DNA of 64,000 nucleotides from assembly GCA_002269645.1 (NCBI GenBank), contig NIVC01000185.1, forward strand, positions 1-64,000. The letters run 5' to 3'. Positions within the stretch are counted from its first letter, which is position 1. Every line of letters begins with the position of its first letter. Shown in pieces: positions 1 to 62,664 of this stretch. The DNA is from Macrostomum lignano. Its lineage: Eukaryota. The translations under genes and the position numbers were made by a program. The notes under the pieces were generated by a model that made no database searches, had not been told where the DNA came from, and was given only the letters and a program-made list of their open reading frames with translations.

Positions 1-339
1 CGAACTATCTCATATTTTTAATGCATTTGTGAACTTTGAAGATGACAAACTCTTTTACAACAGATACTTTTTAATATTACTAGTATACAATTCATGAGTT
101 TATATTGTAGTAAGAAAATTTACTTGCAAATAAATTCAAATCAATAAGTTTAATCTTCTCTATGTATAATTTTCGATTTCCGTTTGGCTAAATTTGTAAA
201 CAATGTAAAAATAGGTTATTCTGTGTATTAGGCTATTAGCATTAGAACTTTCAAACAATTTGCATTTAGAGTTTCTCCTAAACAACTATTAAAGTAGCAG
301 CCATATTTTACTATAAGAACGCCTTTTCTCTTGCATGCA

Positions 340-9701: not shown

Positions 9702-10197
9702 CGTTGTCATTCCTCATGCTCGAGCACGCACCTCTTATTGGCCCATAAATAAATCAGAACTATTAAAATGCTATCCTACCATAACTTACCTAGAAAGAGA
9801 GAGAGAGAAAATAGCGCAAAAAATTCGGATCTCCATGGCAACCGAAATTGAGCCCAAAAGTCGAGTCCTGAGCGGGTGAGCCGACCAAGATAATAATGTG
9901 AGCACAACTCAAACCTTGACGCCATGCACGCAGGCTGCCTGGCCGAGCCATATGGCAGAGATGAGATAGCGAATAACGATATGCCGAAGATCAAGCCTTA
10001 ATCTAAAGGACTGTGCTTGCGCCTGTGCTTTTTGTGTATTTAAACCGCTCGTAAAGTTGACTTGGCCAAGGCGAGTGAAGCGCGAGAGGTAAGGGCAGCT
10101 CAAAAAAGACATGTTTGCGCTACTCATTTAATTAAGCTTAGCGAATTCACCCCGAGTCGTGACCCAACTGACTTGACCTGCCAAGAAGAAATCAGCA

Positions 10198-13100
10198 ATG
10201 AGTTTCACGGACCGCGTCATCAGCCTGTGCGAGACTGCGCCAGAGGGGCGCAACGAGGAGGAGATCGAGTTCTTGGCCAGGTGGATCGAATCCAGCAGCT
10301 CATATTTTCGGAAGCTGCGCAACAAAGGTACGCTGGTTCCTGAGTTCGGTGTTGTTGCTAGCCCATTGCGTTCAAGCGCTTGCTCTCGACCTATTAAAGT
10401 GAATCTCAATGAGACAGAAGTGAATCTCAATGAGACAGAAGTGAATCTCAATGAGACAGAAGTGAATCTCAGTGAGACAGAAGCGAATCTCAATGAGACA
10501 GAAGTGAATCTCAGTGAGACAGAAGTGAATCTCAGTGAGACAGAAGTGAATCTCAATGAGACAGAAGTGAATCTCAGTGAGACAGAAGCGAATCTCAATG
10601 AGACAGAAGTGAATCTCAGTGAGACAGAAGTGAATCTCAATGAGACAGAAGTGAATCTCAATGAGACAGAAGCGAATCTCAATGAGACAGAAGTGAATCT
10701 CAGTGAGACAGAAGTGAATCTCAATGAGACAGAAGTGAATCTCAATGAGACAGAAGTGAATCTCAATGAGACAGAAGTGAATCTCAATGAGACAGACGTG
10801 ATTCTCAATGAGACAGAAGTGAATCTCAGTGAGACAGAAGTGAATCTCAGTGAGACAGAAGTGAATCTCAATGAGACAGAAGTGAATCTCAGTGAGACAG
10901 AAGTGAATCTCAATGAGACAGAAGTGAATCTCAATGAGACAGAAGTGAATCTCAATGAGACAGAAGTGAATCTCAATGAGACAGAAGTGAATCTCAATGA
11001 GACAGAAGTGAATCTCAATGAGACAGAAGTGAATCTCAATGAGACAGAAGCGAATCTCAATGAGACAGAAGTGAATCTCAGTGAGACAGAAGTGAATCTC
11101 AATGAGACAGAAGTGAATCTCAATGAGACAGAAGTGAATCTCAATGAGACAGAAGTGAATCTCAATGAGACAGAAGTGAATCTCAATGCGACAGAAGTGA
11201 ATCTCAATGAGACAGAAGTGAATCTCAGTGAGACAGAAGTGAATCTCAATGAGACAGAAGTGAATCTCAATGAGACAGAAGTGATTGTCAATGAGACAGA
11301 AGTGAATCTCAATGAGACAGAAGTGAATCTCAGTTTGACAGAAGTGAATCTCAATGAGACAGAAGTGATTCTCAATGAGACAGAAGTGATTCTCAATGAG
11401 ACAGAAGTGAATCTCAATGAGACAGAAGTGAATCTCAATGAGACAGAAGTGAATCTCAATGAGACAGAAGTGAATCTCAATGAGACAGACGTGAATCTCA
11501 ATGAGACAGAAGTGAATCTCAATGAGACAGAAGTGAATCTCAATGAGACAGAAGTGAATCTCAATGAGACAGAAGTGAATCTTAATGAGACAGAAGTGAA
11601 TCTCAATGAGACAGAAGTGATTCTCAATGAGACAGAAGTGAATCTCAGTGAGACAGAAGTGATTCTCAATGAGACAGAAGTGAATCTCAGTGAGACAGAA
11701 GTGAATCTCAATGAGACAGAAGTGAATCTCAATGAGACAGAAGTGAATCTCAATGAGACAAAAGTTAATCTCAATGAGACAGACGTGAATCTCAATGAGA
11801 CAAAAGTGAATCTCAACGAGACAGAAGTGAATCTTAATGAGACAGAAGTGAATCTCAATGAGACAGAAGTGAATCTCAGTGAGACAGAAGTGAATCTTAA
11901 TGAGACAGAAGTGAATCTTAATGAGACAGAAGTGAATCTTAATGAGACAGAAGTGATTCTCAATGAGACAGAAGTGAATCTCAGTCAGACAGAAGCGAAT
12001 CTCAATGAGACAGAAGTGAATCTCAGTGAGACAGAAGTGAATCTCAGTCAGACAGAAGCGAATCTCAATGAGACAGAAGTGAATCTTAATGACAGAAGTG
12101 AATCTCAATGAGTTGGAAACTAATGTCAATGGGAGGGAAACTAATCTCAATGAGAGGGAAACTAATCTCACTGAGAGGAAACTAATCTCACTGAGAGGAA
12201 ACTAATTTCAGTGCAGGGGGAGCCCACTTGTGTTTCAAGAAGTCTGAGAGTTCATGTACCGACTGTGCAGGCATTGTAAAGAAAAGAAATCAGTGCGAAA
12301 AGTTTGCATTGTCGGTTGAAATCTATCGCCATGTAGAAAAAATACAGAGAGGCTTTGGTCATGTGCCGCAACTCAATGGCGAAAGTCGACAAGCAGCCAG
12401 CCAGGAGGCAAGCAGTCATTCCGAGTTTGCTGACCCTTTGAGCACGAACTCGGATATGTACGCAGGCACACGCTCACACAGGGTGGGTGTACGGCGGTCC
12501 TGCCTTTTTATGCGCACTTTCAGCTAGGCATGAGTGCCCGACGTGACAAACTCCAGCTATTGCGCATCTGAAAGCTGCGTACGGCTGTTCAGTCCAAGGA
12601 CTGGGGGGTCGCCACACACACTCCCAATTACCCCAGCTAATGCTGGCACCCATTTTACAGCTGGGTTGAACTGAAGCAATGCAGAGTTGAGTGTCTTGCT
12701 CAAGGACACAATTGTTCCGAGTGGGTCAAGAATCGAACCCCCGACCTTTCAGTCGCGAGTCCGACGCTCTGACCACTAGTCTGCAACCCCTTTTGAAAAG
12801 TAACTTCAAACAAAATCGACTGTAGCGTCCTACTTACTTCAGTTGTTTATGAATCGAACTCGGGGTCTCGAACTCAATTTCAACCTCAGATACTAGAATA
12901 TGACTCGATTGGCCACTCAGGCATAAATACCTAGCAAAACAGCTTTCTACTTTCAGTTCAGTAGCAATGAAGAATACCTAAGCTATTTTATAAGAATAAA
13001 GGCAGCTGAGATGACTTTGATAAGTTCAGAAGCCCAAGCTTGCAGACGTAAACAGCTTGCTGATTGGTTCAACCATAATGTACATGATAAGCCACTGAAA

Positions 13101-16100
13101 TGTACATGGCAGATTTAGGCTCGAACAACCGGGGAAAGTAATAAAAATTGGGTGGCGGGGCAGGGGTAGAGGTTCTGTTTGGAGTTTGAATGTTTAAAAT
13201 GGGGGGTATAGCCAATAACTCGTAAATACGCAGCCTGTAATCCTTGTCTTTAAAAATACATTAAAATGCTTCAGTTTAACTTGCTACTGAACTGAAAGTA
13301 GCTTACACGCAAATGTGTTGAGTGGCCCATCTAGTTATTCTAGCATTTGTGATTTCAACTCGTTAAAAAATCTTTCCAGACGCTATTCGAGAAATCGTTC
13401 GCGACTGCCACCTGCAGCGTTTCCATGCCAACGAGCTGATCATTCGGCAGGGCGAGAAGGGCCACAGTTTCTACCTGGTGATCACCGGACGCGTCTCCGT
13501 GTATGTCAACAGCGATGCCGAGCAGGCCTCGGAGCCTGTCACTGCTGCCGACGCCTCGGCTTCAGGCGCAGGGGGTCCCAACCAAGCAGATCGGGACCCA
13601 GAGGCGGATGCGGACGATGCCGACGAGGATGTGGACTTGGCCTTCCTCGATGATGCTAATAAATTAGCCAGTCACGGCGAGGACGCAGAAGAGTTGCGCA
13701 GCCGCTTGCTAGGCGCTCACGTGCTGCAGATGGGCGAGGGCTACGCATTCGGCGAGATCGCCCTCACCAGTCCTAACAGCATCCGTAAGGCGTCCGTCAT
13801 CTGCGATGAGGATGTCGCAGTGCTAGTAATTCACCAGGTGTCATTTACTAGAACTCTTAAAGCCTACCAGCTGCAGGAGTACCAGATGATCGAGAGCTTC
13901 ATAGACACCTGCCCCGTGTTCGTCAACTGGAGACCGAAGCAGCGGCAGAGCCTGCGCAACAGCCTGCACAAGGAGGTTTACGGATACGGCGAGCCGATTG
14001 TGCAGCAGGGCCAGAAGAGCGGAGGCCTGTTCTTTATTGTTGGGTGAGGAAGCGAGTCCATCCACTTAATAGCTATAATATTGTAACATATGATAATTTT
14101 AGCTCGTATGGCTGCGGGCACCTGGCGCAAAGCCTTCGGTGACATGACATCGTCCCATTTTCGAGGAGGGCGTTTCAAAATCTACAAAATTCACAAACCC
14201 GAATTACACCCGGCTTCACGTACGGTATACTCAAACTTTAAATACCCGGATATTAATTTTGAAGCATCTCCACTTAGGAACTGACAGCTGCGAGGCAGTT
14301 GAATTTCACAGAGTAATCATGCCAGGTTTAGGATGCAGAAGTGTGCTTCAATAAATGGACGTGAGAAACGTGAAGTTGTCACGTGTTTCCAATGCGTGCA
14401 TGGTTAGCAAGTGTATGTATATCCTCGTATCCCAAGCATTGCTGCTGCAAGACAATGCTTGCTCCGGTTGCTTCCACCACCTCAGCTGAAATTTCCCGGC
14501 TCCCAAAAACTGCCTCTACTGTTGCTGATACCTGGCTGCATGATCCCCAGTAAGGGGCGGGGGTGGTGGAGGCCGCACTGCTGACCACCCGACCATTCAG
14601 ACACTGCCATGGGTTTGGGGTGAGCCTCCCAGTGCATAGAGAAAGCCTGCTCCAGTTATTATAACATTTTTGGCCCAGACTCCCGGGACCTCTTCATCGA
14701 TCCAAGCAGGCTCAGAGGCAAGGGGTGAAAGAAAGCCAAGAGCGAGAGAGGGGAGAGAGGACAAATAGTAGACCTGTTGAATTTTTTCGTCTACGGGGGC
14801 CTTGATAGACAACCGGTAGTTGCCATGACAATAAGTCCAAATTCAGGTGCATAAGCTGCAACTTTGCCTTCAAGTCAAGTTCAAGTCTCGTTAAAATATG
14901 CTTCTATGTAGGGAAACAAACGTAAAAATAAAACTGAGAAATTTGCTTCTAGGAGCGAACCAGAATAAAGCAAAGTGCTTTCATTTCCCATCTGTCAAGA
15001 GGATCCGTGAAGCTGCTCGCCGATCCAATCAGGTGGCCGGCGAGCATCCAGAAGTCAGAGAAGGACGAACAGTCTTCAGCGGCGCCGGCAGCGACTCCGG
15101 CTCCGGCTGCAGCGGCCGTGCAGGCGGGACTGCTTCGACATCGTCAGGGCTACCAGGCTGCTGAGCAGAGGCAGCGCAGTCGTCAGGTCGAGATCGCCTT
15201 GCTAGGCGAGGGCGAGATTCTCGGGCAAGTGGAGCTGCTCGCAAGTTTAGGCGAGAGTCTCACAACTGCGATAAGCGTCGACAACACCTACGGCTACTGG
15301 CTGAATCGCGCCAATTGTCGCCGACTGCTGTCTCGCAACCGCGGCGCTCTGGCCCAGCTGCGCCAAACGATCCTGCTCCGTCTGCAGTCTCGTTCACGTC
15401 GGGCCCCTCTGATGCGTCGACTCGGCCAGGATCCTCGAATTGCGGGCGGTGCCGCGGCGGCAGCGGCAGTAGCCGCGGCTGCAGCCGCAGCAACCGCGGC
15501 TTCCACAGATCCCGTGGCAGCAGGCGAGGAGCAGCGCCAGCTGCAGCAGCAACAACGCCAGGCTTGGCTGATGCACACGCGCAAGCAGCCGCCGCCTGGC
15601 GACCTGCTCTGGCAGCACATGCTGGCCATGTACGTGGAGGGCCGCAGCCAGCTGGGTCCGGCTCCGGCCGATGCGTCGCTCTACTATCGCCACCTGTGCC
15701 GGGTGAATGCGGAGCGCAGGCGGCATCTTCGAGAGCGATCGAGGCCGGCTAAACTGGTCGCGTCGCTTCAGAACGAAGATGAGGAAGAGGCCAGGGAGTC
15801 TGAGCTGGACAGCGGGCAGCCGCAGTTGAAGATGTGGCAGCAGCAGCAGCAGCAGCGGCGGCGCACGGTCCCTAGGAGTCGCCGGCTGTTGCAACGCGAA
15901 CTGGAAGCATCCGAGAAAGGAATAGTCTCGGGTCTGGGTGAGCGGCCTGATTTTGGTTTCCGTTGAAAAATGGAGCTCTGAGTGGATAAAATATTTAGAT
16001 AAGATTCCTGGAAGGCTGACTGATCAACAGTTAGATGCTTTAAAAATCTTTTTCGACTGGCTTTCATCGCGTAACCCGGATGGAGCAAAGACGATACACT

Positions 16101-18334
16101 AAATCAGCACTATTTTTTTCGCAGTTAAGTAGAACTCATACCCAACTGGCCCGCAACATTTCCTACTCTTCAAACAAAAAGAAATGTCTTCTTTGTCTCG
16201 TCTAAGATAATGGGTGAACTTGAAAAGAAACAACTGTAAAGGTATCAAAGCATCAGTGATATGCTGTTTGGCTAGCGTAGCTTGTATTTTTTGGCAATTA
16301 ATTTTGGTGAAAAATCGGACGCTCAATTCCACAATTCTACAAAATTGTCTCGATTTTTGCGAGCAAGTTTTTTAACTCGGCGATATTCGAGGCCGTCGAG
16401 ATATTTAACAGTTTCTTAGTAGAAACATAAAACGCAAGATTTTTTGGCATCTTTGGCTCGCAAATATCCTGAAGGGGTGGAGAATTTTGGCAGCGAGACG
16501 TTTGCCCCGCCGACGTTTGTACACCGTAGTAGCTGAAAATTCATCTGGTCGGAGTGATTGGTGCAGCTTTTTGTACGCGTCTATCAGATGTAGCTTGTAG
16601 ATTCGCTTGTACTTGTATTGTTGTGGATCCTCTTAATGCAAGTGGGAATGATTATTCGCAATTTCAGCAGGTATAGTATCGAATTTCGTCTGTCTCATGC
16701 AGTAAATAGTTTCGTTTCAAGCTTCTTTGATGATTAAATCTTTCTAGAATCGTTTGAATCTTACACTGAGTTTAAAATTAAGAACAATTTTAAGTCGGTG
16801 TCAAACTTAAATTATTTGAATATTTATTTGCACAAAAGTGACTGTGTACTGAAAATCGCATAAAACATACAGTAAAAAATCTTCAAGAGCAAAGTATTCT
16901 CGTGTTAAGGAAGCAAATTAAGGGAAGGCTAGGCTGGGCTAAACTTGAACTATTGAAGAATATTGTAGCTGGGAAATGTGCGGCGGGCAAACATGCGATG
17001 GGCGAACACCCAACGGGAAAGCATCCGACGGGCGAACACCCAACGGGCAAACATCCGATGGGCGAACACCCAACGGGAAAGCAATCGACGGGCGAACACC
17101 CAACGGGAAAGCATCCGACGGGCGAACACCCAACGGGAAAGCATCCGACGGGCGAACACCCAACGGGCAAACATCCGATGGGCGAACACCCAACGGGAAA
17201 GCAATCGACGGGCGAACACCCAACGGGAAAGCATCCGACGGGCGAACACCCAACGGGAAAGCAATCGACGGGCGAACACCCAACGGGAAAGCATCCGACG
17301 GGCGAACACCCAACGGGAAAGCATCCGACGGGCGAACACCCAACGGGAAAGCATCCGCCGGGCAAAACATCTACATTTTTTAGAGAAACAAAAAAATTAA
17401 TTCCAAATTTTAAATTTTAAGATTGAATACTTGTCCTTGCCTCCACTCAGAATATCGACAGCCTGCTGCTGCTTTCGCTGCCAACGAGGCCAACAGAGCG
17501 GCCTTCCGCCCGACTGATGCTGGCAAAGGGCCTGGTGACTCAGCAGGCGCCGCCAATGCACCTCCGAGTGCCGCCTGGACAACCTCGAACTCTGGCGTGC
17601 CCCGACTGCTGACGGATTTCGAATTGTCCAAAGCGCACCTGCGCCTGATTGAGCGTCGCATTGAAGCCTTCTGCACGGATACAGCAGGTGTTGTTTATCG
17701 TAGACCCGGCGTCGGCGCGGTTGGCGGCGGCATTGGCGGCAACGTCAAAGGTCAAAAGCCGCATGTGGAGCCTCTTCTGCGACTGCCCGTAAGAAATGGA
17801 CAGTGCGTCTGATTGGACTGGGAACTTTTACTTTCGATAGCGGAAAACTCGAATTGAGTTGAGGGGAAGATACTGAGTATCACGGATTGAGTTGAGGGGA
17901 GATACTGAGTATCACGGATTGAGTTGAGGGGAGATACTGAGTATCACAGATTGAGTAGAGGGGAGATACTGAGTATCACGGTTTGAGTTGAGGGATAATT
18001 TTAAGTTAATTTCTATAAATTTATTGCACCAACTGAATTCCATTCTACCCGCCTGCTTCGAATCCGAAAGGACGTGGAGATACAGAAGCCGCGTCTCCGA
18101 GGCAGTCGCGTTCTCGTTAAAACCAAGCAGTGCCCCGCCAGCAACGCCAATGGCCAGATGGTCCTGGGGCACAGTCACGTGACCAACCACCTGGTGCAGA
18201 GTCTGCGACTGACCCTGGTCTTCCACGACGCATGGGCCGCGCTCGCCGACTCCGTCGACCTCGTCTACTCGAGGGAATCTGCCGAGCCACAGGTCTCAAC
18301 GATTGAAGTTTATAACTTTTTAGCAAAAGCTTAA
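10198..18334 (+). CDS. Protein with tandem cyclic-nucleotide-binding domains (CNBD-type), 5 exons: 10198-10327, 13380-14043, 15000-15937, 17451-17788, 18071-18334; about 777 aa
   Basis: All four introns are GT-AG with matching phases (1, 2, 1, 0), and the summed exon length of 2334 is divisible by 3. cNMP motifs: [22 protein letters not shown]...FGEIAL...RKASV and [20 protein letters not shown]...[13 protein letters not shown]...AISV. The 3' end of the last exon is uncertain (possible donor at ~18292). Confidence 0.82.
10398..12110. repeat. Intronic tandem repeat, 21-bp unit GTGAATCTCAATGAGACAGAA, about 80 copies
   Basis: Seen directly. It lies between the donor at 10328 and the acceptor at 13379 and explains the long NLNETEV, FTSVSLR and IHFCLIE ORFs. 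Confidence 0.97.
12554..12790. mobile_element. SINE-like dispersed repeat, copy 1
   Basis: About 230 bp, highly similar to 40829-41075: CAGCTATTGCGC...TTTTACAGCTGGG...GTCTTGCTCAAGGACACAA...GAATCGAACCCCCGACC (an inverted B-box-like end). Confidence 0.65.
12947..13301. mobile_element. MITE-like element with perfect 21-bp inverted repeats
   Basis: CTACTTTCAGTTCAGTAGCAA (12947-12967) is the exact reverse complement of TTGCTACTGAACTGAAAGTAG (13281-13301). A third copy of the arm lies at ~40571-40588. Confidence 0.5.
16990..17365. repeat. Intronic tandem repeat, 30-bp unit GGGCGAACACCCAACGGGAAAGCATCCGAC
   Basis: Seen directly. All six frames are open because the unit has no stop codon. Confidence 0.95.
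17853..17993. repeat. Intronic tandem repeat, ~32-bp unit ATTGAGTTGAGGGGAGATACTGAGTATCACGG, about 4 copies
   Basis: Seen directly. Confidence 0.9.
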
Positions 18335-18404
18335 AGAACAAACGTTACTGTGACGAAGTGTCTGCAATAATTGTCTCAGTCTATTGTTGAAAGCTACTTC
18401 AGCG

Positions 18405-19316
<912 letters not shown>

Positions 19317-19909
19317 GGTGAAAAATTATGTGCTTATTCAGATAAATTTAATATTAACGTTAATCGATAGTTTACGTGATAAAGACATAAAAATATAGTA
19401 TTAATACTTTATTAATAAAAAGTTCTGTAAAAATTTGCTTTCATTTCTTAGGTAAAGTCACGTTAGGGACGGTAATAAAGTAAGTACCGAACTACGGTCT
19501 GTTAAAGTTGACGCGTGAGGCATTTCTTTTCTGTTTTATTAAGTATTGGTAGGTTCTTATAAACAATTAGTCTAGTTACCAGTTTAATGGTATTCGGAAA
19601 CTAGTACAAGTTTAAATACGTTATATAGCTCTAAAACCTCTCGATATCTTTGGTTGTTAGAGGATCGTTGAGTTTGCGTGACATATAGTTTCCGCAAGCA
19701 GTGTCCGTGTTTTTTTAGGGAAACTGTTTTGAGATAACACTTATTAGTTGAGGAGTTTTGAAATCGCGGAGCAAGAATAGTTTTTTAAATCATGTGACGA
19801 AAACTAACGGACGACAACGACATTGACACCGACATATTTTCAGGGTGTATAAAGAGAACTAAGATGGATATCATCTCTTTATCCTTACGACATAAGGGGG
19901 ACTGCGACG

Positions 19910-20980
19910 AGTATAAGGGACTTCATTGGGTATAAGGGACTTCGATGGGCATTATGGGACTTCGATGGGCATTATGGGACTTCGATGGGAATAAGGGGAC
20001 TTCGATGGGTATAAAGGGATTTCGATGGGTATAAGGTGACTGTGATGGGTATAATGGGACTTCGATGGGTATCATGGGACTTTGATGGGCATAATGGGAC
20101 TTCGATAGGTATAAAGGGACTTCGATGGGCATTATGGGACTTCGATGGGCATTATGGGACTTCGATAGGTATAGTGGGACTTCGATGGGCATTATGGGAC
20201 TTCGATGGGCATTATGGGATTTCGATGGGTATCATGGGACTTCGATGGGCATTATGGGATTTCCATGGTATCATGGGACTTCGATGGGCATTATGGGATT
20301 TCGATGGGTATCATGGGACTTCGATGGGTATAATGAGACTTCGATGGGAACAATGGGGTTTCGATGGGTATAATGGGACTTCGATGGGTATAATGGGGCA
20401 TCGATAGGTATAATGGGACTTCGATGGGTATAAAGGGACTTCGATGGGTATAATGGGACTTCGATGGGTATAATGGGGCATCGATAGGTATAATGGGACT
20501 TCGATAGGTATAATGGGACTTCGATGGGTATAAAGGGACTTCGATGGGTATAATGGGACTTCGATGGGTATAATGGGGCATCGATAGGTATAATGGGACT
20601 TCGATAGGTATAATGGGACTTCGATGGGTATAAAGGGACTTCGATGGGTATAATGGGACTTCGATGGGTATAATGGGACTTCGATGGGTATAATGGACTT
20701 CGATGGGTATAATGGGACTTCGATGGGTATAATGGGACTTCGATGGGTATAATGGACTTCGATGGGTATAAAGGGACTTCGATGGGTATAAAGGGACTTC
20801 GATGGGTATAATGGGACTTCGATGGGTATAATGGGACTTCGATGGGTATAAAGGGACATCGATGGGTATAATGGGACTTCGATGGGTATAATGGGACTTC
20901 GATGGGTATAATGGGACTTCGATGGGTATAATGGGACTTCGATGGGTATAATGGGACTTCGATGGGTATAATGGGACTTG
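19910..20980. repeat. Tandem repeat, 20-bp unit GGGTATAATGGGACTTCGAT, inside the mirror block (complement reading CCCATATTACCCTGAAGCTA)
   Basis: Seen directly. Confidence 0.95.
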
Positions 20981-22032
20981 TTAAAGCGTAGCTCCATAAT
21001 CTTGAAATTCGAATCTATTCAAAGACGATTCAACTATAGGCTAGGGTCTGGTCTCCTAAGTCTCGTACGTACCGGACTCGAACGTTAGCATGTCAATTTT
21101 GTCCATTGATTCCGAAGAGAGCGGGAAGTTCAACTCGTCCCCCCACCGACTGACCGGTATCGTTGCCTGCACGGGCTGTCCGAAACTGAGTTGTTTCGTT
21201 GTTTGTTACGGGCAACGGCTCAGGAGTCGTCGGGCCGGTCGGTGGGGTAGCGAGAGGAGGAGGTTCACAACGGTTTTACTCGGCTTATTCGTCAAACTCA
21301 GGGAAATTCATGGTGGGGGACGAGACGCGACTGTGACCGTCAGCGAGGCGTAAGAGCATAAAAGATTAGTTTATAAGTCGGACGACCTTCAAGATTATTA
21401 ACTTACAGACTCAACGTCGCAGGCCGTCGCCTGTTTGGGAAGGATGAGTGGAATGCGACACAAAAAATTAAACGTCGGTACGACGAGAGGTCGAAGGGCA
21501 CAGCGAAGTACTGCTTCCTCCTTCTCTATCCCGTCTTTTAAAACCTTCCTTTATCTCCTCCAGGACGTCCGACTGCCTCCGTCTTCTTGTTACTTGTCCA
21601 ACGAATCACTCTCCCCACCGACAGGCCAGAGGGCGCCGGAAGTTTTGAGGTAGCGGGGGGGAAAACGCTGCACGTCGTTGGCGTCTCAACCGACCGGACG
21701 TCGTCGAGGCGGACAGCGAGGGTATCTCAGGACCCTCGAGGGAGGAGTTTCTGTTCCCCTGCGACCCTGCTACCCCTCTCAAAAAGGGGAAATTGGGGGA
21801 GGGCGGTACGGGCAGAGAGACGACGTACCCCTTCCTTTCGTTAAACGGACTCGTCTCACCTTAAGAGCCGAACCCCTTGCCACCGAACGACCACCCTGCG
21901 CCCCAACCGGATAAAGTTCAGCCACATCCGTCGGCGAGGGGTCAATTCAGTGCCTCTACACTCGTCTTTGGGCATCACTAAGCTATCGGGGAGAGCGAGT
22001 GCGAACAAAGAGTTAAGCCGTTAGCTCTTCCG

Positions 22033-22971
22033 TACCGCCTGTTCTTTTGACTGCGACGTTTCTTCTGGTTTCTTCTCCTGTCGTTCTTTTATCTCGGCGG
22101 CGGCGGTCACGTTTTTCTCCTTCTACTTCTTCTGCTGCTCCTGCTTCTCCTGCTTCTTCTTCTTCTTCTCGTCTTTTGCCTGCGATTCTTCGGGCGACGA
22201 CTGGTCCTACGACTACTCCTGCTACTCCTACTCCTTCTGCTGCTTCTACTTCTTCTCTTTGGCCGGCGACGGTGGCGGCGATTTTTCCTCCTTCTGCTTC
22301 TACTTCTTCTTCTACTTCTTCTACTCCTCCTACTTCGACTCGGTCGGTTCGGTCGCCGTCGCCGTCGACTACTGCTCCTACTCCTACTCCTACTCCTACT
22401 TCTACTACTTCTCCTTCTTCTCTTTCGACTCGGCCGGTTCGGTCGCCGTCGACTCCTACTACTACTTCTACTCCTACTTCTTCTACTTCTGCTTCTGCTT
22501 CTTCTCGGCCGATTCGGTCGTCGTCGTCGCCGACTCCTACTCCTGCTCCTACTTCTGCTTCTGCTTCTGCTTCTTCTTCTTCTTGTTCGCAGGCCCCACG
22601 GTCGTTTTCAGCTGCTCCTTCTACTTCTGCTTCTTCTTCTGCTCCTACTTCTTCTTCTTCTTCTTCTTCTCCTTCTTCTCTTCTTTCGCCTTCTCCTACC
22701 TCTGCTTCTACTCCTGCTTCTTCTTCTCCTTCTGCTACCGTACCTGTGTGACCTGTTTTACCGCCGCCTGTACTTCTTCACCGATCGCCTCAGGCCTCAC
22801 CTCGACCTGCGTCTCCTTTGCCTCCCGTACAACCGGCCTAGGTACCTGCAACTTTTCAAGTACCTTCCGTACAGCCTGCTTCTGTTTCGCAAGCATTTGG
22901 TCCTCTAGCTCCTATACTTCAGCTACAGCAACGTCGTCTAGTACCTGGCCGAACACAGACCCCGCCGCACT
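22033..22971. other. Hidden ORF readable only as the complement in left-to-right order: 312-aa highly acidic protein
   Basis: The complement of 22033-22035 (tac) is ATG. It translates without a stop as MADKKTDAAKKTKEEDSKKIEPPPPVQKEEDEEDDE...AEPAKPAAAA(D/E)n...GMDTLDKMAADMKKWLAESGVELDAEETEGMLAGSMDVEKFMEGMSDEDKAFVNQEIEDMKSMSLQQIMDRLVSGAA, with TGA at 22969-22971, followed by T-rich UTR-like sequence. Confidence 0.88.
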
Positions 22972-24359
22972 TGCGCCGATGACTCCAGACTTGCTACAAC
23001 CAGAAAGTCGGGCTGACCTCACATCGATATGTACACAAAAATATCCCTTACGTTTCGATTAAAATCCATCTACTTTACATCCAAATCAACCCTTTGCTTA
23101 ACAGCAAATAATCTACCCACAGTTCAAAACTAATTTAAACTAAAACAATTTTCCAGACAAACAGTCTAAACATAAAATCGCTGCGCAAAGTTGATTATGA
23201 AAATGCTCCTTATAAAAGAAAATTATGCTTCAATACATCTTCTAAATTGGACGAAAACAACCCCCCTTCCATAAACGTATTATCAAGCATATTCTATATA
23301 TCTGTTTGCTAAAGGGCCGTAATTGAGCGACAATATAACTTATATTGGCTTATTTTAGGGACTTACCTTGATTATGGGACCTTTAGTGTTGTGTCATGAG
23401 CATTCTAGGGTTCCAAACCGAGTCTGTCTTAAATCATCAATTCAGGTTTTATTTATTCGTCTTGACAGAGCGTGAGATAAAAGAACTAGGGCATAAAAGA
23501 TCTACTTCTTTTGTTACATGACAACTTAGCTTTGAAGCTACAGCTTTAAAAGAGTACAGCCATATCGCATAGAAATACGGAATATTCGAGGAGACTTGGA
23601 CTGTGACGACTTCCTGAGTTCACGCACAACTTTTGTAGAAAAAAACAAACATAGACACGTACATGATGCACGTGATTTAATAAGCGTGCGCGTGCGTAAA
23701 ATTGTTATCTACACTCACATTTTAAGTCTAAGTAATAAATTATATCGTTTTAAACATACTTAAAGACTAGTTACTTTGTTAACAACTGCTACAAAAAATA
23801 CGGAAATCAAAAAAAATAATTTGGCTAATAATATGCTCGCATGTGTGCACGTTTCCATACGAACGTGAACATGTGATCATAGAGCCTTTTAGCATAAACG
23901 GCAACTCTTTTCACGTACGTACCCGTTCCTTAAAAGCCACAAAGTAATTTTCACGTTAATCGTTAAAAATCTCGCCGGGAACAGTCTGTCTAATCTGATC
24001 TGATCTGACAGATCTCAGGGTACTGGTAAACGTTAATATATATTAAGAATGTACAAATTTTTGTCCTAAAAAAATAAAATAATCTCCGTCCCCCAACACA
24101 CGTGGGACCGCGTGAAATTCGCTGTAACCGTGCGTTGGCCGCTCTCCGTAATGACGGGTAAGGCGGCTGAGGGGACTCGTCCGTATGTTCGCGCGCCTAT
24201 GCATGCGTCCGTGTGTGAGTGTGTCCTCACATGTCGCCGCGATTGAAATATAATAACAATCCGTACATGTGAAGTGACGCGGAACCCCCAACCGGGAGTT
24301 CCGGCAATTAACGTGCTCGTCTCGGTTCGGCTCTAAGGTTAAGTCGGGGTTTAATTACA

Positions 24360-24430
24360 CTGACGTGAACCTTAGCTCGGACCCAGCGACCGTGTGGTCT
24401 CGTCGACGCGATGGCGACCCGATGCCGGGG
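24360..24430. mobile_element. tRNA-derived (Ala-like) SINE head in mirror orientation
   Basis: Reading 24430 to 24370 backwards without complementing gives GGGGCCGTAGCCCAGCGGTAGCGCAGCTGCTCTGGTGTGCCAGCGACCCAGGCTCGATTCC. The A box TAGCCCAGCGG fits TRGCNNAGYGG. The B box GGCTCGATTCC has one mismatch to GGTTCGANNCC. Confidence 0.65.
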
Positions 24431-25824
24431 TTGTCCTAAAACTAACAAAATTAAGAATATTATGATATGGAAGATTAACGCGAGATAAACCACTTTAGGC
24501 ACAACTTAAACCACGCTTAAGCGGTCGTCCGACTGCACAGTCGGTCAATCTCAAACCGCTATCTGAATCGTCTTTCGTCTTTCGTACGTTAAACCTTTAT
24601 CGACGCAAGTCAAACCAGACGGGTTCTTGTCGAGCATGTACATGTTCTCTTTAACTCTGTACCGTGAATAGCACTACTCTCTCCAGTCTCGTCGTAGTGC
24701 CGTCGCTTCATAGACGTCACCCACTAGGTGTGTGTCTACATGCAAGTCGCGACGGATTTAGACCTGCTTTAAGTGAAAATTATGTACATGTACGTCCACA
24801 TTGTTTAGTATAATTGTAACTATGACTGTGGCTAAATGACACGAAGCTGACAAAACAAATTACACCAAAAGTACAAACTCTCGCAAATACTGTCACGTAA
24901 CGAGCACCACTTTCATATACCTTTCGAAACTAAAAGGCAGAAAACTCAAATCGGGTACGTTTATCTTGCGCGTCAAATATGGTTTAACCAACGACCAAAA
25001 GACGTATACAGATACCGTTTAGTTAAAGAACTACCGAAGCCTGAAAAGTTCGGACATCGAAGCCTGGAGTCTTGAGTCTTTACTTAGAGATTCTCGAGAC
25101 CGGAGAGCGAGGACAGTCTACCAGTCAGGGCTCCACCGATCTAAAACCCGCTCGTCGTTCCAGGATATCGATTCTCTTCTGTCGCTCTCTGTTCGACCCT
25201 CTTAAACTTTCCATCTTCTTTAATCGATTGGCCGTCCGATTGAATTGGGCGACGGTGGTCAGGCACGCGGGGCCGAGTGGTTTGGCCTCGAAAGCTTTAG
25301 CCTGAAAGCTGATCTTCCCGTGACGTGAATGGACGGTAGATATCACTCACAGAAAATCGACAGATAGAGCTTCAGTATCGGCTTATCTTCCCTGTGACGA
25401 CCCTGATTTCAAGCGTAACCGGTACGAGGGACTGAGAGAGGACTTCTGCAGGGGGTTCTTGTGGTGGCGAGCTTTCAAGCACCGCCCAATGTACTACCTC
25501 ATTACCAAATTCCCAGAAGTACATGTACAAGTACACGTAACTGCACGCTTTTGGCACTAAATGTGTTAACACGTCGACAGATAGCGATAATGTAGGTGTA
25601 TTGTCACCTTTGGAGATCTTTAGACTAACATTTAACTCGTTTTAGCCGCTTAGCTGCCTGAGACTGCACGAAGGCACCAGTCTGGCCCTTATAGTTTGCA
25701 TGTTTATCATGATTGCTTAGATCGACTGGTTGACTGGGACCTGTGTCGCTTCCGGTCCACTGTGACCTCTGCCCCTAGATCTAGTCGCTCATCTCAGTTG
25801 GCATTGCGAAAAAGAAAGAAAACG

Positions 25825-27146: not shown

Positions 27147-27412
<266 letters not shown>

Positions 27413-28604
27413 ATAGTTTGGCTCAGGCAAATAGCTTGCTGTTTGGCCAGTATAAGCCAATGTTTAATAATAATTAAAAAATGAAGGGACTTTTTTGATG
27501 TGTAAGTATATGCATGTGTTACGATCGTTTTGTAAAAAATGTAAAAAAAATTTTTGAAAGAGTGCCAAACTTTTTTCTACGAATTATTCGAACTGTATAT
27601 CCTTTTAATAAGTTTCGAAATCCGAACTATCTTTGTGTATTTGTATCTTTGATTAGTTCGAGCGACCAGAGATCCCAACTTATGACTCGAAAAATATCAA
27701 AATCGTCATGCAATTGAAGTTATAACAGCCGCAGACTAATAATTAATGCGGCGATCGTATATTGATCCATAGTAGTTCAGACCGATAAGATGTGCTTGAC
27801 ACGAGGAGAATCGTATATTAAGCGTATATTAGTAGTGATAGCAACTCAACGCAGCAGTTATAGCTCTTAGAATTCCTGGTTTTTGCTACCGTACGTTTTG
27901 CATGGTGTTTCTAATAGACTCCGGGGTGTGCGGGAGAAGTGTCTATATTCATTGAACACCGTCATATCTGGAGAGAGCGTAGTATTACATTTATATTTAT
28001 GTACATGCACAATCAATTTTTAAGAATGCATATATCCGCGGCTGATACTTTAATCAATTTAGTCAATCTATTTTTTCTAGGATCCACGCCTAAGAGAAAA
28101 CAATATGCAATAAAAATGAAATGAAGTTCTCTTTGTTGCGCTTTTTTTATGGTCTGAAATGGTAAACTTACACATGCTGTTAAAATTAAGCTAAAATTCA
28201 AATTCAGACCGGACGCCAGAATCGTAATCTAAATATACTAAATCTTCCATATACTAAAAATGATGTTTGTTTGTACCAAATCGATTATTTGCTTGCTATA
28301 GTTTTGCTGTAGCTCCGCTGTATATGCAACAAACAAGCCTTATATATTATAGATGCATTGAAGCTTTTTTAGGGTTTTTTAGTAAGGAATAGATATTTTG
28401 TAAAGGACAATAAGATATTATACTGCCTTCGCTATTTAATTTTTATTTTGTCCCCTTATTCACTCAATATCATTAGGGCCTGGCCTACCCATCCCAGTTA
28501 GTCTATAGGGCGATCTTCCAGTTTGTTTCACGATATTATTCGCTTGTTTATTTTAGTTTGAAATTGTGCGTCAATGTAGTGAAACATCTGAAGACGATAC
28601 CTAC

Positions 28605-39523: not shown

Positions 39524-42500
39524 TCAAAGCCGGGTCTCTTGGCCGCCAGCCGGAAATCCGTCGGGCAACGGCAGTGCTGAGTACTGGCTGCGCCGCCGCC
39601 TGTCGGCCCGGCCGCCGCCGACTCCGCACAGGCAGCAAATGCACAGCGACATCACTATTGTGAGCAGCTGCGGGCGCGGTCATTGGGGGGCGGGAAATCT
39701 GTCAGTACTTAAATTGTTACACTTTATTATACGCTATTAGATGTAGCAAAATCCTGATTTTTAAAAGCTTTTAAAGCAATCCAAATTAAAAGGGTGAATG
39801 TATGATAACAGTTGATTTCTGTCGCCTCAAAGACAGGGCTCAAAGACCCCCGTGCAAACTAAATCATGTAAACTAACTAAACCTTAAATATTCGTACTTT
39901 AGGGCAAAAGTCGTTTTATTAGCCCTCTTACACCTCCCCCAGCTGAACCCTCCGACCGCTTCTTGCCGCACAAAACCTCTACCCTGCCCGCCTCCATTTA
40001 ATTGCCTTTCTCGGTGTTCTATATCTAAAGCTGCTATGTACATTAAAAAGACTCATTTATTGGCCCTCTTAACTCCCCCCGGTTGAATTCCCCGACCGCG
40101 TCTTGCCGCACGAAACCTCTACCCCCCCGCTCGCCTCCATTTAATTGCCTTTCTCGGTGTTCTATATCTAAAGCTACTATGTACATTAAAAAGATTCATT
40201 TATTGACCCTCTTAACTCCCCCCGGTTGACTTCCCCGACCGCGTCTTGCCGCACGAAACGTCTACCCCCCCCCGCCCGCCTCCATTTAATTGCCTTTCTC
40301 GGTGTTCTATATCTAAAGCTGCTATGTACATTAAAAAGACTCATTTATTGGCCCTCTTAACTCCCCCCGGTTGACTTCCCCGACCGCGTCTTGCCGCACG
40401 AAACGTCTACCCCCCCGCCGCCCGCCTCCATTTAATTGCCTTTCTCGGTGTTTCAGCCAAATGCTGACTGCCATGTACATTATCAGTGGCGCTGGCAAAT
40501 GTACATTATGCCTTATAAGTCACTCTCAACTACCTTTCGTGTCGTGAAATAGCTTACGCATGCTTCCTTACTACTGAACTGAAAGTAGAAAAACTGTCAA
40601 GAAAACTGATAAAAAATCCACAGCCACAATTATTATGGTTCTGAGAACTGGCAGAGACTATTCAAATATGCTTTGCCAATTAGCCTACTTATTATATAGT
40701 AGCGTGAAATGTTGCTCATTATGTGATACCAGTTCTAATTAAAGTCGTCCCTGGATATGGCTAGTAATATTATAAATTAATTACAATCTGCCCTATTTGG
40801 GCCAGATGTGCAACCGACAGCTCAGCCGCAGCTATTGCGCGGCGCATCTGAAGGCTGCGTACGGCTGTTCAGTCCAAGGACTGGGGGGGGGGGTCGCCAC
40901 ACCCTCAATTACCCCCCATCTAATGCTGGCACCCATTTTACAGCTGGGTGAACTGAAGCAATGCAGAGTTAGGCGTCTTGCTCAAGGACACAAATTGTTC
41001 CGAGTGGGTCACGAATCAAACCCTCGACCTCGTCGTGAGTCTGACGCTCTAAGTCAAACCACTAGGCTACAACCCGCCCTTACTTGGCTATCAAACACAA
41101 CGCTAAAACATTTTACATTACTAATGTAAAAGTACTAGGATAAGTTAAGGATAAGTAAGGATAAGTAGATAAGAATCTACTAGGATAAGTAGAATAATCG
41201 GAAAACTAGCGAATTAATTCACCTCTAGCGCTGTCAGGCCAACAGAAACGAATAGGCCGATGCGGATCGCGCGCCAGGTAGTTTCCATGACAACGGAACG
41301 GCAGCCCTGGAATAAAGCGATTGAGGATAGCCATGTCGCATCTGAGCTTATATACTATTTAAGCTCGCGTCTACAACCCCATTTGAAGTTTAGCAATTGC
41401 CACTGGTTTTGGATAAAAAATCTACTATTAGCAACAAGTGGCGATTCACACCATGAGGGCCAACCCCCAAGGCACAGAGTGTACATGGCCTTACGATTAG
41501 AAAGTCAGGGGGCTGCTGTAAACCCTGTGGGAGCGAGTGCGCGCCTGCGTACAGCATTGGCGCGCTTGTGTGCCCAGGAGTCAGATGAGGAATAGGCAGA
41601 ATCAGCGCCAGTTGTGGGACAATGTCATCTACAGCACCTTAAGCTAATGCTCACCCTATCATAGGCCAGCTCAAACGGCAGCGAGTACGGCTTGGGCTCG
41701 CACTCTGTAGGGCCCAGCTTCTCTGAGTTGCAGCAGGACCAAGGAATCTGCAGGGTATCGCCGCCTGCGGCCCCTCTGTAGTCCCTGTAGGACTGACCGC
41801 CGCAGCAGTAAAACTGAAAAATAAGAGATTTTCTTGATTGTCAAACTTTTGACCCCGTGTGCAGAAATCAGAATAAGAAACAAGAAATAACAGAACCAAC
41901 CCGCTTGTGAAGGATGTCCATTAGGCCAGCATTGCCATCATTACTATACTGATAGTTGCGCTGCCAGGTATCGAAGGACTCGCCAATCGTCTCTTTAACC
42001 TGAATTTGTATTTTTAGTATGATAGAAATAAGCTACTTACACTGTTCAGTAGTATTTTCTGTGTGTTAAATTAAATAAAAACATTTGTCCAGAAAAAATA
42101 TGACCCGTAGAAGGGAGTTTTCTAACGTCAGATACTAGCATCCCCTTTGACCCTTGGCATCTCAGCAACTTCACCCGTGAGCATTGGCATCAGCAACTTC
42201 ACCCGTGAGCATTGGCATCGCAGTAACTCCAGCCGTGAGCCTTGGCATCAGCAACTTCACCCGTGAGCCTTGGCATCTCAGCAACTCCAGCCGTGAGCAT
42301 TGGCATCTCAGCAACTCCACCTGTGAGCATTGGCATCTCAGCAACTCCACCCGTGAGCCTTGGCATCTCAGCAACTCCACCTGTGAGCCTTGGCATCTCA
42401 GCAACTCCAGCCGTGAGCATTGGCATCTCAGCAACTCCACCTGTGAGCATTGGCATCTCAGCAACTCCAGCCGTGAGCATTGGCATCTCAGCAACTCCAC

Positions 42501-49584: not shown

Positions 49585-50279
49585 TCAGTCATCATTGCTG
49601 AAAAACCGCTTGCCCATGCGGATGTAGCTCGCTCGTTTGTCGGCTTCATCAAAGGGACGTTTGCCCATGCGGATGTAGCTTGCTCGCTTGCCCATGCGGA
49701 TGTAGCTTGCTCGTTTGTCGGCTTCATCAAAGGGACGCTTGCCCATGCGGATGTAGCTCGCTCGCTTGTCGGCTTCATCAAAGGAACGTTTGCCCATGCG
49801 GATGTAGCTTGCTCGCTTGCCCATGCGGATGTAGCTTGCTCGTTTGTCGGCTTCATCAAAGGGACGCTTGCCCATGCGGATGTAGCTCGCTCGCTTGTCA
49901 GCTTCATCAAAGGGACGTTTGCCCATGCGGATGTAGCTTGCTCGCTTGCCCATGCGGATGTAGCTTGCTCGCTTGTCGGCTTCATCAAAGGGACGTTTGC
50001 CCATGCGGATGTAGCTCGCTCGCTTGTCGGCTTCATCAAAGGGACGTTTGCCCATGCGGATGTAGCTCGCTCGCTTGTCTACATCCTGATTCGATGGCTT
50101 GTCGCAGTTATCACAGGCGAAACCGAAGCCCACCAAGGATGCGGCAATTAGTAGGAGAATCTTAGCCAGCTTTACCTGAAAGTTAACGATAGGTATTTGC
50201 GATTGGAACCTAGCCGAGACCAAAAAAGTCCCTGGTCACTATGTCAAATCTTATTGCACGATTGCGAGTTTCTTACCAT
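49585..50279 (-). CDS. Neuropeptide precursor, 197 aa, with 11 copies of ASYIRM-amide; exon 1 ends with ATG 50279-50277, intron 50276-50176, exon 2 50175-49585
   Basis: AAAATG|GTAAGA donor and TTAACTTTCAG| acceptor give M-VKLAKILLLIAASLVGFGFA (signal peptide). There are 11 KR-ASYIRMG-KR units and 7 (P/S)FDEAD acidic spacers. Confidence 0.93.
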
Positions 50280-62583: not shown

Positions 62584-62664
62584 CCCTCCCTTTAATCATT
62601 CAGCCATTAATTAATTCATTTCATCACTCCTTCAGGGGCTCACTGCACAGCCTAGATCGCAGCA

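What the first reader, a model, noticed from the sequence alone, without database searches (positions are those of the whole stretch)
22033..22971. Cryptic 312-aa hyper-acidic protein encoded in the complement-only reading
Seen in the sequence: ATG to TGA with no internal stop over 939 nt. Synonymous codon variation (GAT/GAC, GAA/GAG) runs through the D/E tracts. The architecture is a short basic N-terminus, repeated (A/E)EPAKPAAAA linkers between long D/E runs, and a non-repetitive ~77-aa Met-rich, probably helical C-terminal domain. The ordinary ORFs here (Ser/Thr/Pro-rich 22047-22751 and Phe/Cys/Tyr-rich 22259-23062) are shadows of it. Inference: a low-affinity Ca2+-binding, histone-chaperone-like or biomineral/adhesive-type acidic protein. 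I do not recognise the family.
Basis: partly seen in the sequence, partly recalled or inferred. Interest (0 to 1): 0.85.

Follow-up and report, generated by a model that had tools for sequence, protein, structure and literature searches.

The report
Real gene inside mirrored sequence block
The 312-codon hyper-acidic ORF is a genuine gene of the flatworm Macrostomum lignano, but it is readable only as a "complement" because about 7 kb of this window is written complemented without being reversed, which is a sequence-handling artefact and not a hidden way of encoding proteins.

Summary
Complementing 22033-22971 without reversing it gives ATG...TGA, 312 aa, 170 of them D/E. It is not a chance ORF. 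A public M. lignano gene model (UniRef A0A1I8F9I8, P0001) is tiled by exact matches in two complement-only frames for 137 of its 138 residues, and it shares at most 5 residues with any natural or reverse-only frame.

The window itself is in natural orientation. Kinesin, cNMP-binding, mariner transposase and Ras/Rho domains all lie in ordinary frames on both sides. Only a block from about 18.2 kb to about 25.4 kb is mirrored:
- Held-out direction-sensitive k-mer scores flip sign there.
- Four dinucleotide reversal ratios in its non-coding DNA are almost exactly the reciprocals of the outside values.
- Its one dispersed repeat matches three outside copies only after un-mirroring.

No polymerase or ribosome reads DNA this way, and no rearrangement produces complement without reversal. 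The "cryptic encoding" is therefore a data artefact laid over an ordinary gene.

The gene encodes an orphan, signal-peptide-less polyanion (net charge -142) with a roughly 77-aa helical C-terminus. It has no Pfam, PDB or HMMER relatives. The function is unknown. A cytosolic or nuclear binder of basic proteins is a weak guess, and secreted or lumenal roles are disfavoured.

The parts
18200..25430 (.). Mirrored text block (complement without reversal, which is the same as reversal without complement of the other strand). Junctions are statistical estimates: left 18.04-18.40 kb, right 25.25-25.68 kb.
   Evidence: Held-out direction-sensitive k-mer score: outside windows +76 +/- 37 (4% below 0, n=102); windows in 18-25.5 kb average -62 (93% below 0). 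Cumulative change-points at 18215 and 25428, stable for k=3-6. Dinucleotide reversal ratios are reciprocal to the outside values.
22033..22971 (.). The finding: 312-codon ORF plus TGA, readable only in the complement-only sense. It is the coding sequence of a real M. lignano gene.
   Evidence: P0001 is tiled by exact matches in complement frames. First ATG after an in-frame TAG at 21985-21987, with context GGCATGG (purine at -3, G at +4).
22033..22116 (.). Basic, hydrophilic N-terminus (residues 1-28, MADKKTDAAKKTKEEDSKKIEPPPPVQK). No signal-peptide-like hydrophobic core.
   Evidence: Maximum 9-residue hydropathy in the first 48 aa is -0.91.
22117..22737 (.). Acidic repeat region (residues 29-235): eight D/E runs separated by (A/E)EPAKPAAA-type linkers. 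On the + strand this is (CTN)n with a degenerate repeat of about 75-90 nt.
   Evidence: (TRF periods 75-90 nt over 22286-22670).
22738..22968 (.). Non-repetitive, Met-rich C-terminal domain (residues 236-312), predicted helical. An orphan by sequence.
   Evidence: 81 aa hit only P0001, E=1.7e-22, as the single candidate in 5.8 billion proteins. Helices with pLDDT 70-83 in the P0001 model. No Pfam, PDB or HMMER relatives.
24150..24304 (.). Copy of a dispersed repeat lying inside the block. It matches its relatives only after un-mirroring.
   Evidence: The block as written gives 0 blastn HSPs to the rest of the window. Complemented, it gives 3 HSPs from this element. 20-nt exact core TGAGGGCCAACCCCCAAGGC.
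41451..41600 (+). Naturally oriented copy of the same dispersed repeat. Shorter copies lie at 12451-12511 and 61652-61681.
18405..19316 (.). (GACA)n array at the left edge of the block. It is its own reversal, so it carries no direction information and blurs the left junction.
   Evidence: period 4, 229 copies. The cumulative score is flat over it.
19898..20979 (.). 20-nt tandem array (54 copies) inside the mirrored block.
13367..15963 (+). Nearest verified natural-frame gene to the left of the block: a cyclic-nucleotide-binding protein that matches M. lignano P0004.
   Evidence: PF00027 E=1e-15. P0004 E=1.4e-76, with long 100%-identical blocks.

Best explanation
Window positions from about 18.2 kb to about 25.4 kb are a mirror image of real Macrostomum lignano DNA. 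The block was complemented without being reversed, or equivalently reversed without being complemented. The rest of the window is written normally. Inside the block lies an ordinary, intron-less protein-coding gene. The protein is real. It is a 312-aa, signal-peptide-less polyanion with a small helical C-terminal domain, and it is an orphan restricted, as far as can be seen, to this species. The 'cryptic encoding' is not biology: the DNA as written would not produce this protein. Shown: the ORF, its identity to a public gene model, the natural orientation of the flanks, and the mirrored state of the block including its non-coding DNA. Inferred: that the cause is a sequence-handling step. I judge it more likely to have arisen downstream of assembly, for example when the window was prepared or as a deliberate control, than from an assembler, because assemblers reverse-complement. 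The protein's function is also inferred, from composition only: probably a cytosolic or nuclear polyanionic binder or chaperone of basic proteins, at low confidence (about 0.25).
For: (1) P0001 (UniRef A0A1I8F9I8, M. lignano) is the only hit of the C-terminal 81 aa among 5.8 billion proteins, E=1.7e-22. 137 of its 138 residues are tiled colinearly by exact matches in two complement-only frames (22247-22981), with longest exact peptides of 43 and 32 aa. The longest exact peptide shared with any natural or reverse-only frame is 5 aa. tblastn gives E=7e-44 on the complemented window against >=0.004 on natural frames. (3) The flanks are natural. In ordinary + frames: Kinesin 3e-116, cNMP_binding 1e-15, Transposase_1 1e-30 and Ras 1e-43. 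The cNMP gene matches M. lignano P0004 in 100%-identical blocks. (4) Held-out k-mer reversal score: +76 +/- 37 outside, -62 inside. Change-points at about 18.2 and 25.43 kb are stable for k=3-6. (5) With the ORF and tandem arrays excluded, the block's dinucleotide reversal ratios are 0.768, 0.855, 0.919 and 0.591. The reciprocals of the outside values are 0.767, 0.868, 0.900 and 0.632. Three of the four lie outside the range of all 20 equal-sized outside chunks. (6) The block as written has no blastn match to the rest of the window. Un-mirrored, its repeat at 24181-24304 matches three outside copies. (7) Coding signature in the mirror frame: variation is concentrated at codon position 3, the ORF starts at the first ATG after an in-frame stop in a GGCATGG context, and an ATTAAA lies 160 nt after the stop. 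(8) The kinesin's natural D/E-coding stretch at 1488-1528 aligns with the complemented tract in the same direction.
Against: The reference locus could not be fetched: three natural ORFs and P0001 are not on record in the contig collection. The junctions are therefore statistical, not base-exact, and I cannot say whether the deposited record carries the same block. The k-mer score is near zero between about 22.5 and 23.5 kb, so mirroring there rests on the ORF itself, which extends to 22971, and on the repeat at 24.2 kb. Synonymous codon usage did not discriminate between readings. No other recognisable gene lies in the block to give a second protein-level confirmation. I know of no standard assembler that emits complement-without-reverse, so the origin of the artefact is unexplained.
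Confidence: 0.9

Rival explanations
1. Chance ORF: the complement-only ORF is a by-product of A-poor, low-complexity (CTN)n DNA and encodes nothing.
For: Three of the 12 readings have no internal stop over the span, because A is only 9.6%. For the C-terminal 76 codons alone, 16% of dinucleotide shuffles are fully open in some complement frame. No Pfam family.
Against: The non-repetitive C-terminus matches an independent public gene model exactly (E=1.7e-22 in 5.8 billion proteins; exact 43-aa block). Variation is concentrated at codon position 3. 0/2000 shuffles reach the full length.
Confidence: 0.01
2. Genuine cryptic biology: the DNA physically exists as written, and the protein is produced by an unknown process that reads the complement in the same direction, or the block is a physically real 'mirror copy' of a gene.
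For: Nothing positive. It is simply not excluded without reads spanning the junctions.
Against: From established knowledge, all known polymerases copy antiparallel, and inversions give the reverse complement, never the plain complement. The mirror signature covers about 7 kb of mostly non-coding DNA and a dispersed repeat, not just the gene. A gene-specific code would not do that. Peptide identity to P0001 is 100% in the matched blocks, as expected for the same locus and not for a decaying odd copy.
Confidence: 0.01
3. A natural-frame gene is the real one (a mucin-like S/T/P/A ORF at 22047-22751 on +, or an E/G/V/A stretch at 22016-22777 on -), and the acidic reading is its shadow.
For: Both stretches are open. 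S/T/P-rich proteins exist.
Against: In those frames the variable base falls at codon position 1 or 2, so every change alters the amino acid. Neither has an ATG start: the ORF listing gives TTG starts on + and nothing on the - strand. No Pfam hit. P0001 shares at most 5 residues with natural frames. The surrounding non-coding DNA is mirrored too.
Confidence: 0.02
4. The block is natural and the rest of the window is mirrored.
For: The k-mer and dinucleotide tests show only that the block and the flanks are opposite, not which one is natural.
Against: Four conserved Pfam domains (3e-116 to 1e-15) and M. lignano P0004 lie in ordinary frames of the flanks on both sides. The gene in the block is readable only in the complement-only sense.
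Confidence: 0
5. Sub-variant of the best explanation: the mirrored block is already present in a deposited public assembly (a scaffolding or patching bug) and was not introduced when this window was produced.
For: M. lignano assemblies are error-prone. REAPR scored 31.9% of ML2 bases and 64% of Mlig_3_7 bases as error-free (PMC5730564). The window contains no N gaps.
Against: From my own knowledge, assemblers and scaffolders reverse-complement, so a clean 7-kb complement-only block inside a contig is not a known failure mode. The gene caller behind P0001 saw this locus un-mirrored.
Confidence: 0.25

Closest known systems
UniRef A0A1I8F9I8_9PLAT, 'CHM2A protein', Macrostomum lignano (P0001, 138 aa)
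   Same: Same locus. 137 of 138 residues are exact matches to complement-only frames of 22247-22981, including the C-terminal domain.
   Different: P0001 is a fragmentary, frame-hopping model. It has 1-nt frame switches at 22342, 22549 and 22967 and skips three segments, including 15 aa of the C-terminal domain. The window's mirror ORF is an intact 312 aa with its own ATG. The name CHM2A (CHMP2A) is unsupported: no Snf7 domain was found.
Polyanionic, intrinsically disordered nuclear or cytosolic proteins (prothymosin-alpha, ANP32 acidic tails, nucleoplasmin/nucleolin acidic tracts). Resemblance recalled from general knowledge.
   Same: Very long D/E tracts (54% D+E, net charge -142), a short basic N-terminus, and no signal peptide or membrane segment.
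   Different: No shared domain. Pfam finds no nucleoplasmin core, NAP, LRR or prothymosin family at E<=1. The helical Met-rich C-terminus has no detectable relatives. The likeness is in composition only, not family membership.
Calsequestrin-type or secreted acidic proteins (Ca2+ buffers, biomineral or adhesive proteins)
   Same: High density of carboxylates.
   Different: No signal peptide or any hydrophobic stretch (maximum 19-residue hydropathy -0.02). No calsequestrin/thioredoxin-like domain.
'Complement instead of reverse-complement' sequence-handling error. Named from my own knowledge, with no citation.
   Same: It produces exactly this signature. Genes are readable only in the complement-only sense, reversal-asymmetric k-mer statistics are inverted, and repeats match only after un-mirroring.
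   Different: Here it affects an internal block of about 7.2 kb and not a whole record, and its origin could not be traced.

Membership tests
Mirrored-text artefact (complement without reversal) | A known protein maps to complement-only frames and to no natural frame | tested here: met
   Exact blocks of 43 and 32 aa in complement frames against at most 5 aa in plus, reverse-complement or reverse-only frames. tblastn E=7e-44 against >=0.004.
Mirrored-text artefact (complement without reversal) | Reversal-asymmetric sequence statistics are inverted in the block, including its non-coding DNA | tested here: met
   Held-out k-mer score -62 inside against +76 outside. Dinucleotide ratios are reciprocals of the outside values.
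Mirrored-text artefact (complement without reversal) | Dispersed repeats in the block match outside copies only after un-mirroring | tested here: met
   0 HSPs as written, 3 HSPs after complementing, all from 24181-24304.
Mirrored-text artefact (complement without reversal) | Flanking sequence is in natural orientation | tested here: met
   Kinesin, cNMP_binding, Transposase_1 and Ras in natural + frames. P0004 matches.
Mirrored-text artefact (complement without reversal) | Base-exact junctions confirmed against a reference assembly or raw reads | not testable with these tools
   The source contig is not retrievable, and no eukaryotic genome or read collection was available.
Bona fide protein-coding gene of M. 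lignano | ATG-to-stop ORF with variation concentrated at codon position 3, and an independent gene model | tested here: met
Bona fide protein-coding gene of M. lignano | Readable 5'->3' on one of the two natural strands of the DNA as given | tested here: not met
Bona fide protein-coding gene of M. lignano | Transcript or peptide evidence | not testable with these tools
   No transcriptome or proteome collection for this species was available.
Snf7 / CHMP2A (the name carried by the UniRef entry) | Snf7 domain (PF03357) | tested here: not met
   No Pfam family at E<=1 for the full protein or the C-terminus. No precomputed Pfam domain for P0001.
Calsequestrin-type lumenal Ca2+ buffer, or secreted acidic adhesive/biomineral protein | N-terminal signal peptide; calsequestrin/thioredoxin-like fold | tested here: not met
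   No hydrophobic segment. No Pfam hit.
Histone chaperones with acidic tracts (nucleoplasmin, NAP/SET, ANP32) | The family's folded core domain (nucleoplasmin core, NAP domain, LRR cap) | tested here: not met
   No Pfam hit at E<=1, no PDB sequence hit, no fold hit (low-confidence model).
Histone chaperones with acidic tracts (nucleoplasmin, NAP/SET, ANP32) | Long D/E tracts in a non-secreted protein (shared but non-specific) | tested here: met
   170 of 312 residues are D/E, and there is no signal peptide.

The most novel reading that the evidence does not exclude
The block from about 18.2 to 25.4 kb exists physically in the worm's genome exactly as written, as a same-direction complementary copy of a gene-bearing segment made by an unknown parallel-strand copying process. 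Alternatively, the protein is produced from it by an unknown reading mechanism.
Probability: 0.01. Interest if true: 0.95.

Novelty: not a real feature. Interest (0 to 1): 0.1.

Why it matters
As biology it matters little. Un-mirrored, this is an ordinary single-exon gene for an orphan, extremely acidic protein that is already present, in fragmentary and misnamed form, in the public M. lignano proteome. As data quality it matters more. A block of about 7 kb written as complement-without-reverse hides a real gene from every standard gene caller and creates spurious 'shadow' ORFs, such as poly-Leu, S/T/P-rich and F/C/Y-rich stretches. It could also be mistaken for exotic biology. If the block is present in a deposited record, it should be corrected. 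If it was introduced downstream or planted as a control, the correct call is 'artefact'. Two by-products may be useful. The window's mirror reading gives an intact 312-aa sequence for a gene whose public model is broken. The reciprocal-dinucleotide test is a quick, reference-free way to detect mirrored text.

Tried and rejected
- Whole-window mirroring: rejected. The kinesin and three further domains lie in natural frames, and non-repetitive natural ORFs outnumber mirror ORFs 94 to 55.
- ORF length as evidence: weak, because three of 12 readings are fully open.
- Synonymous codon usage against the window's real genes: not discriminating.
- Pfam on the mirror protein, its C-terminus and the natural-frame ORFs over the same DNA: nothing at E<=1.
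- Pfam on all other mirror ORFs in the block: nothing.
- Full-length homology search: swamped by acidic low-complexity candidates. It gave two marginal hits at E about 6e-4 with 3-8% coverage, which I disregard.
- Exhaustive HMMER search with P0001: only itself.
- PDB sequence search: best E=0.37.
- AF2 single-sequence model of P0001: pLDDT 64. Its Foldseek search against the PDB gave best E=8.3. This is uninformative, and P0001 lacks 15 aa of the domain.
- Retrieving the source contig through exact products of three natural ORFs and P0001: nothing on record.
- A second mirrored patch elsewhere in the window: none found. The remaining mirror HSPs are the self-symmetric (GACA)n and the kinesin's D/E tract.
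- Deciding between 'complemented in place' and 'reversed in place' (gene order kept or flipped): not possible without the reference.

Full report
OBSERVATION

I complemented window 22033-22971 base by base, without reversing it, and translated left to right. The result is MADKK...VSGAA followed by TGA: 312 codons with no internal stop, composed of E 105, D 65, A 41 and K 27.
- a basic N-terminus;
- eight D/E runs of 12-23 residues;
- (A/E)EPAKPAAA(AA) linkers;
- a non-repetitive 77-aa C-terminus with 10 Met.

On the + strand the acidic part is (CTN)n. Position 1 is C in 178/206 codons, position 2 is T in 159/206, and position 3 is spread over all four bases. The S/T/P-rich ORF (22047-22751) and the F/C/Y-rich ORF (22259-23062) are simply the other phases of the same DNA.

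IS IT MORE THAN CHANCE?

ORF length alone is weak evidence. A makes up only 9.6% of the bases, and three of the twelve possible readings (six natural, six mirror) have no internal stop over the whole span. On the other hand, 0 of 2000 dinucleotide shuffles reached 311 open codons, and position-preserving shuffles averaged 5.4 in-frame stops. Codon-usage comparison with the window's real genes did not discriminate between readings.

Homology settles the question. The C-terminal 81 aa retrieved exactly one candidate from 5.8 billion proteins: UniRef A0A1I8F9I8 of Macrostomum lignano (P0001, 138 aa), at E=1.7e-22. Of P0001's 138 residues, 137 are tiled, colinearly and with exact matches, by two complement-only frames of 22247-22981. 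The longest exact blocks are 43 and 32 aa. The longest peptide P0001 shares with any natural or reverse-only frame is 5 aa. P0001 switches frame by 1 nt at three points and skips three segments. That is what a gene caller does on an indel-rich assembly of this same locus. The ML2 assembly is documented as having low base accuracy and fewer intact ORFs than Mlig_3_7 (PMC5730564). So the mirror reading is a real coding sequence, and the window gives it intact. It starts at the first ATG after an in-frame TAG, in a GGCATGG context, and an ATTAAA lies 160 nt after the stop.

WHY 'COMPLEMENT-ONLY'?

The window as a whole is not mirrored. Ordinary + frames encode the following:
- a kinesin motor (PF00225, 3e-116);
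- a cNMP-binding domain (1e-15);
- a mariner Transposase_1 (1e-30);
- a Ras/Rho GTPase (1e-43).

These lie on both sides of the finding. The cNMP gene matches M. lignano P0004 in long 100%-identical blocks interrupted by frame-shifted stretches, the same pattern as P0001. The flanks and the finding are therefore DNA of the same organism in opposite textual orientation.

Three independent tests map a mirrored block.
1. K-mer score. I scored each k-mer against its reversal, training only on sequence outside 16-28 kb and more than 2 kb from the scored window. Outside windows score +76 +/- 37 (4% below zero, n=102). Windows between 18 and 25.5 kb average -62 (93% below zero). Cumulative change-points fall at about 18.2 kb (support 18.04-18.40) and about 25.43 kb (support 25.25-25.68), and they are stable for k=3-6. 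The left edge is blurred by a (GACA)n array that is its own reversal.
2. Dinucleotide ratios. With the ORF and tandem arrays excluded, the block's ratios (CA+TG)/(AC+GT), (AG+CT)/(GA+TC), AT/TA and GC/CG are 0.768, 0.855, 0.919 and 0.591. The outside values are 1.303, 1.151, 1.111 and 1.582, whose reciprocals are 0.767, 0.868, 0.900 and 0.632. Three of the four block values lie beyond the range of all 20 equal-sized outside chunks.
3. Dispersed repeats. As written, the block has no blastn match to the rest of the window. After complementing, a dispersed repeat at 24181-24304 (20-nt exact core TGAGGGCCAACCCCCAAGGC) matches copies at 41451-41574, 12451-12511 and 61652-61681.

The only other mirror matches in the window are the self-symmetric (GACA)n and the kinesin's own D/E-coding stretch, which aligns with the complemented tract in the same direction. 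No second mirrored patch was seen.

MECHANISM

From established knowledge, every known polymerase copies antiparallel, and inversions give the reverse complement. No biological process turns a segment into its plain complement, and no ribosome or RNA polymerase reads one. The mirror signature also extends over about 7 kb of mostly non-coding DNA. The best explanation is therefore a sequence-handling artefact: a block written as complement-without-reverse (equivalently reverse-without-complement) inside an otherwise correct sequence. My confidence is 0.9.

I could not determine where the artefact arose. The source contig is not retrievable with these tools. By inference, assemblers reverse-complement, and the gene caller behind P0001 saw the locus un-mirrored. 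A step downstream of assembly, or a deliberate control, therefore seems likelier (about 0.65) than an error in a deposited assembly (about 0.25). I also could not tell whether the block was complemented in place or reversed in place.

THE GENE ITSELF

The protein is 312 aa and about 35 kDa, with net charge -142 and GRAVY -1.93. It has no hydrophobic segment anywhere (maximum 19-residue hydropathy -0.02), so it has no signal peptide or membrane anchor. Searches for relatives all came back empty:
- Pfam gives nothing at E<=1.
- The PDB sequence search gives nothing (best E=0.37).
- HMMER over 1.84 billion representatives finds only P0001.
- A single-sequence AF2 model of P0001 predicts four helices in the C-terminal part at pLDDT 70-83, but the model is low-confidence overall (pLDDT 64) and lacks 15 residues of the domain. 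Its fold search is empty.

The UniRef name 'CHM2A' has no Snf7 domain behind it. This is an orphan polyanion. Secreted adhesive or biomineral roles and a calsequestrin-type lumenal Ca2+ store are disfavoured by the lack of a signal peptide. The remaining guess, a cytosolic or nuclear binder or chaperone of basic proteins with the helical C-terminus as a docking module, rests on composition only (about 0.25).

COMPARISON, NOVELTY AND VERDICT

The closest known object is the public model P0001, which is the same locus in fragmentary form. In composition the protein resembles prothymosin, ANP32 and nucleoplasmin-type acidic tracts, but it fails every domain-level membership test I could run. The claimed feature, a protein cryptically encoded in the complement-only reading, is not a real feature of the DNA. 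It is an ordinary, already catalogued gene seen through mirrored text. The biological interest is low (0.1). The practical value is as a data-integrity flag and as an intact sequence for a gene whose public model is broken. The only exotic reading left, that the mirrored DNA is physically real, has about 1% probability. It would be refuted by aligning the block to any reference assembly or by reads across the two junctions.

Noticed in passing
window 49585-50223, - strand (natural frame): An ORF with a hydrophobic leader (KLAKILLLIAASLVGFGFA) followed by 11 copies of ASYIRMG. Each copy is flanked by KR dibasic sites, with PFDEAD spacers. It looks like a neuropeptide prohormone that would yield ASYIRM-amide, reminiscent (from memory) of the flatworm (G)YIRFamide FLPs. 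The listed start is TTG, so the true ATG or first exon may lie upstream.
   Followed up: partly
window 298-2414, + strand: Kinesin-2-like motor gene (PF00225, 3e-116) with a coiled-coil tail and its own natural D/E stretch at 1488-1528. The N-terminal piece (298-765) is in a different frame from the main ORF (462-2414), which implies a short intron or a frameshift.
   Followed up: partly
window 13367-15963, + strand: Cyclic-nucleotide-binding-domain protein gene matching M. lignano UniRef model P0004. That model has 100%-identical blocks broken by frame-shifted stretches, so the public model looks damaged by assembly indels and the window's ORFs look cleaner.
   Followed up: partly
window 58852-59562 (+) and 62656-63282 (+): A mariner-type transposase remnant (Transposase_1, 1e-30) and a Rho/Ras-family small GTPase exon (Ras, 1e-43).
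   Followed up: partly
window 10177-12213; 18405-19316; 19898-20979; 27152-27417; 30.8-32.8 kb; 37.4-39.4 kb; 51.4-53.1 kb: Very large tandem arrays: a 21/63-nt unit reading NETEVNL, (GACA)n with 229 copies, a 20-mer with 54 copies, (TAG)n with 89 copies, and others. They keep many frames open for hundreds of codons. This is consistent with the roughly 15% simple and tandem repeat content reported for M. lignano (PMC5730564).
   Followed up: partly
window 12451-12511, 24150-24304, 41451-41600, 61652-61681: A short dispersed repeat family (core TGAGGGCCAACCCCCAAGGC) with at least four copies in the window. It was not classified.
   Followed up: partly
P0001 (UniRef A0A1I8F9I8): The public entry is named 'CHM2A protein', but it has no Snf7/CHMP domain and its first 32 residues come from the wrong reading frame. 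The name and the model both look unreliable.
   Followed up: yes
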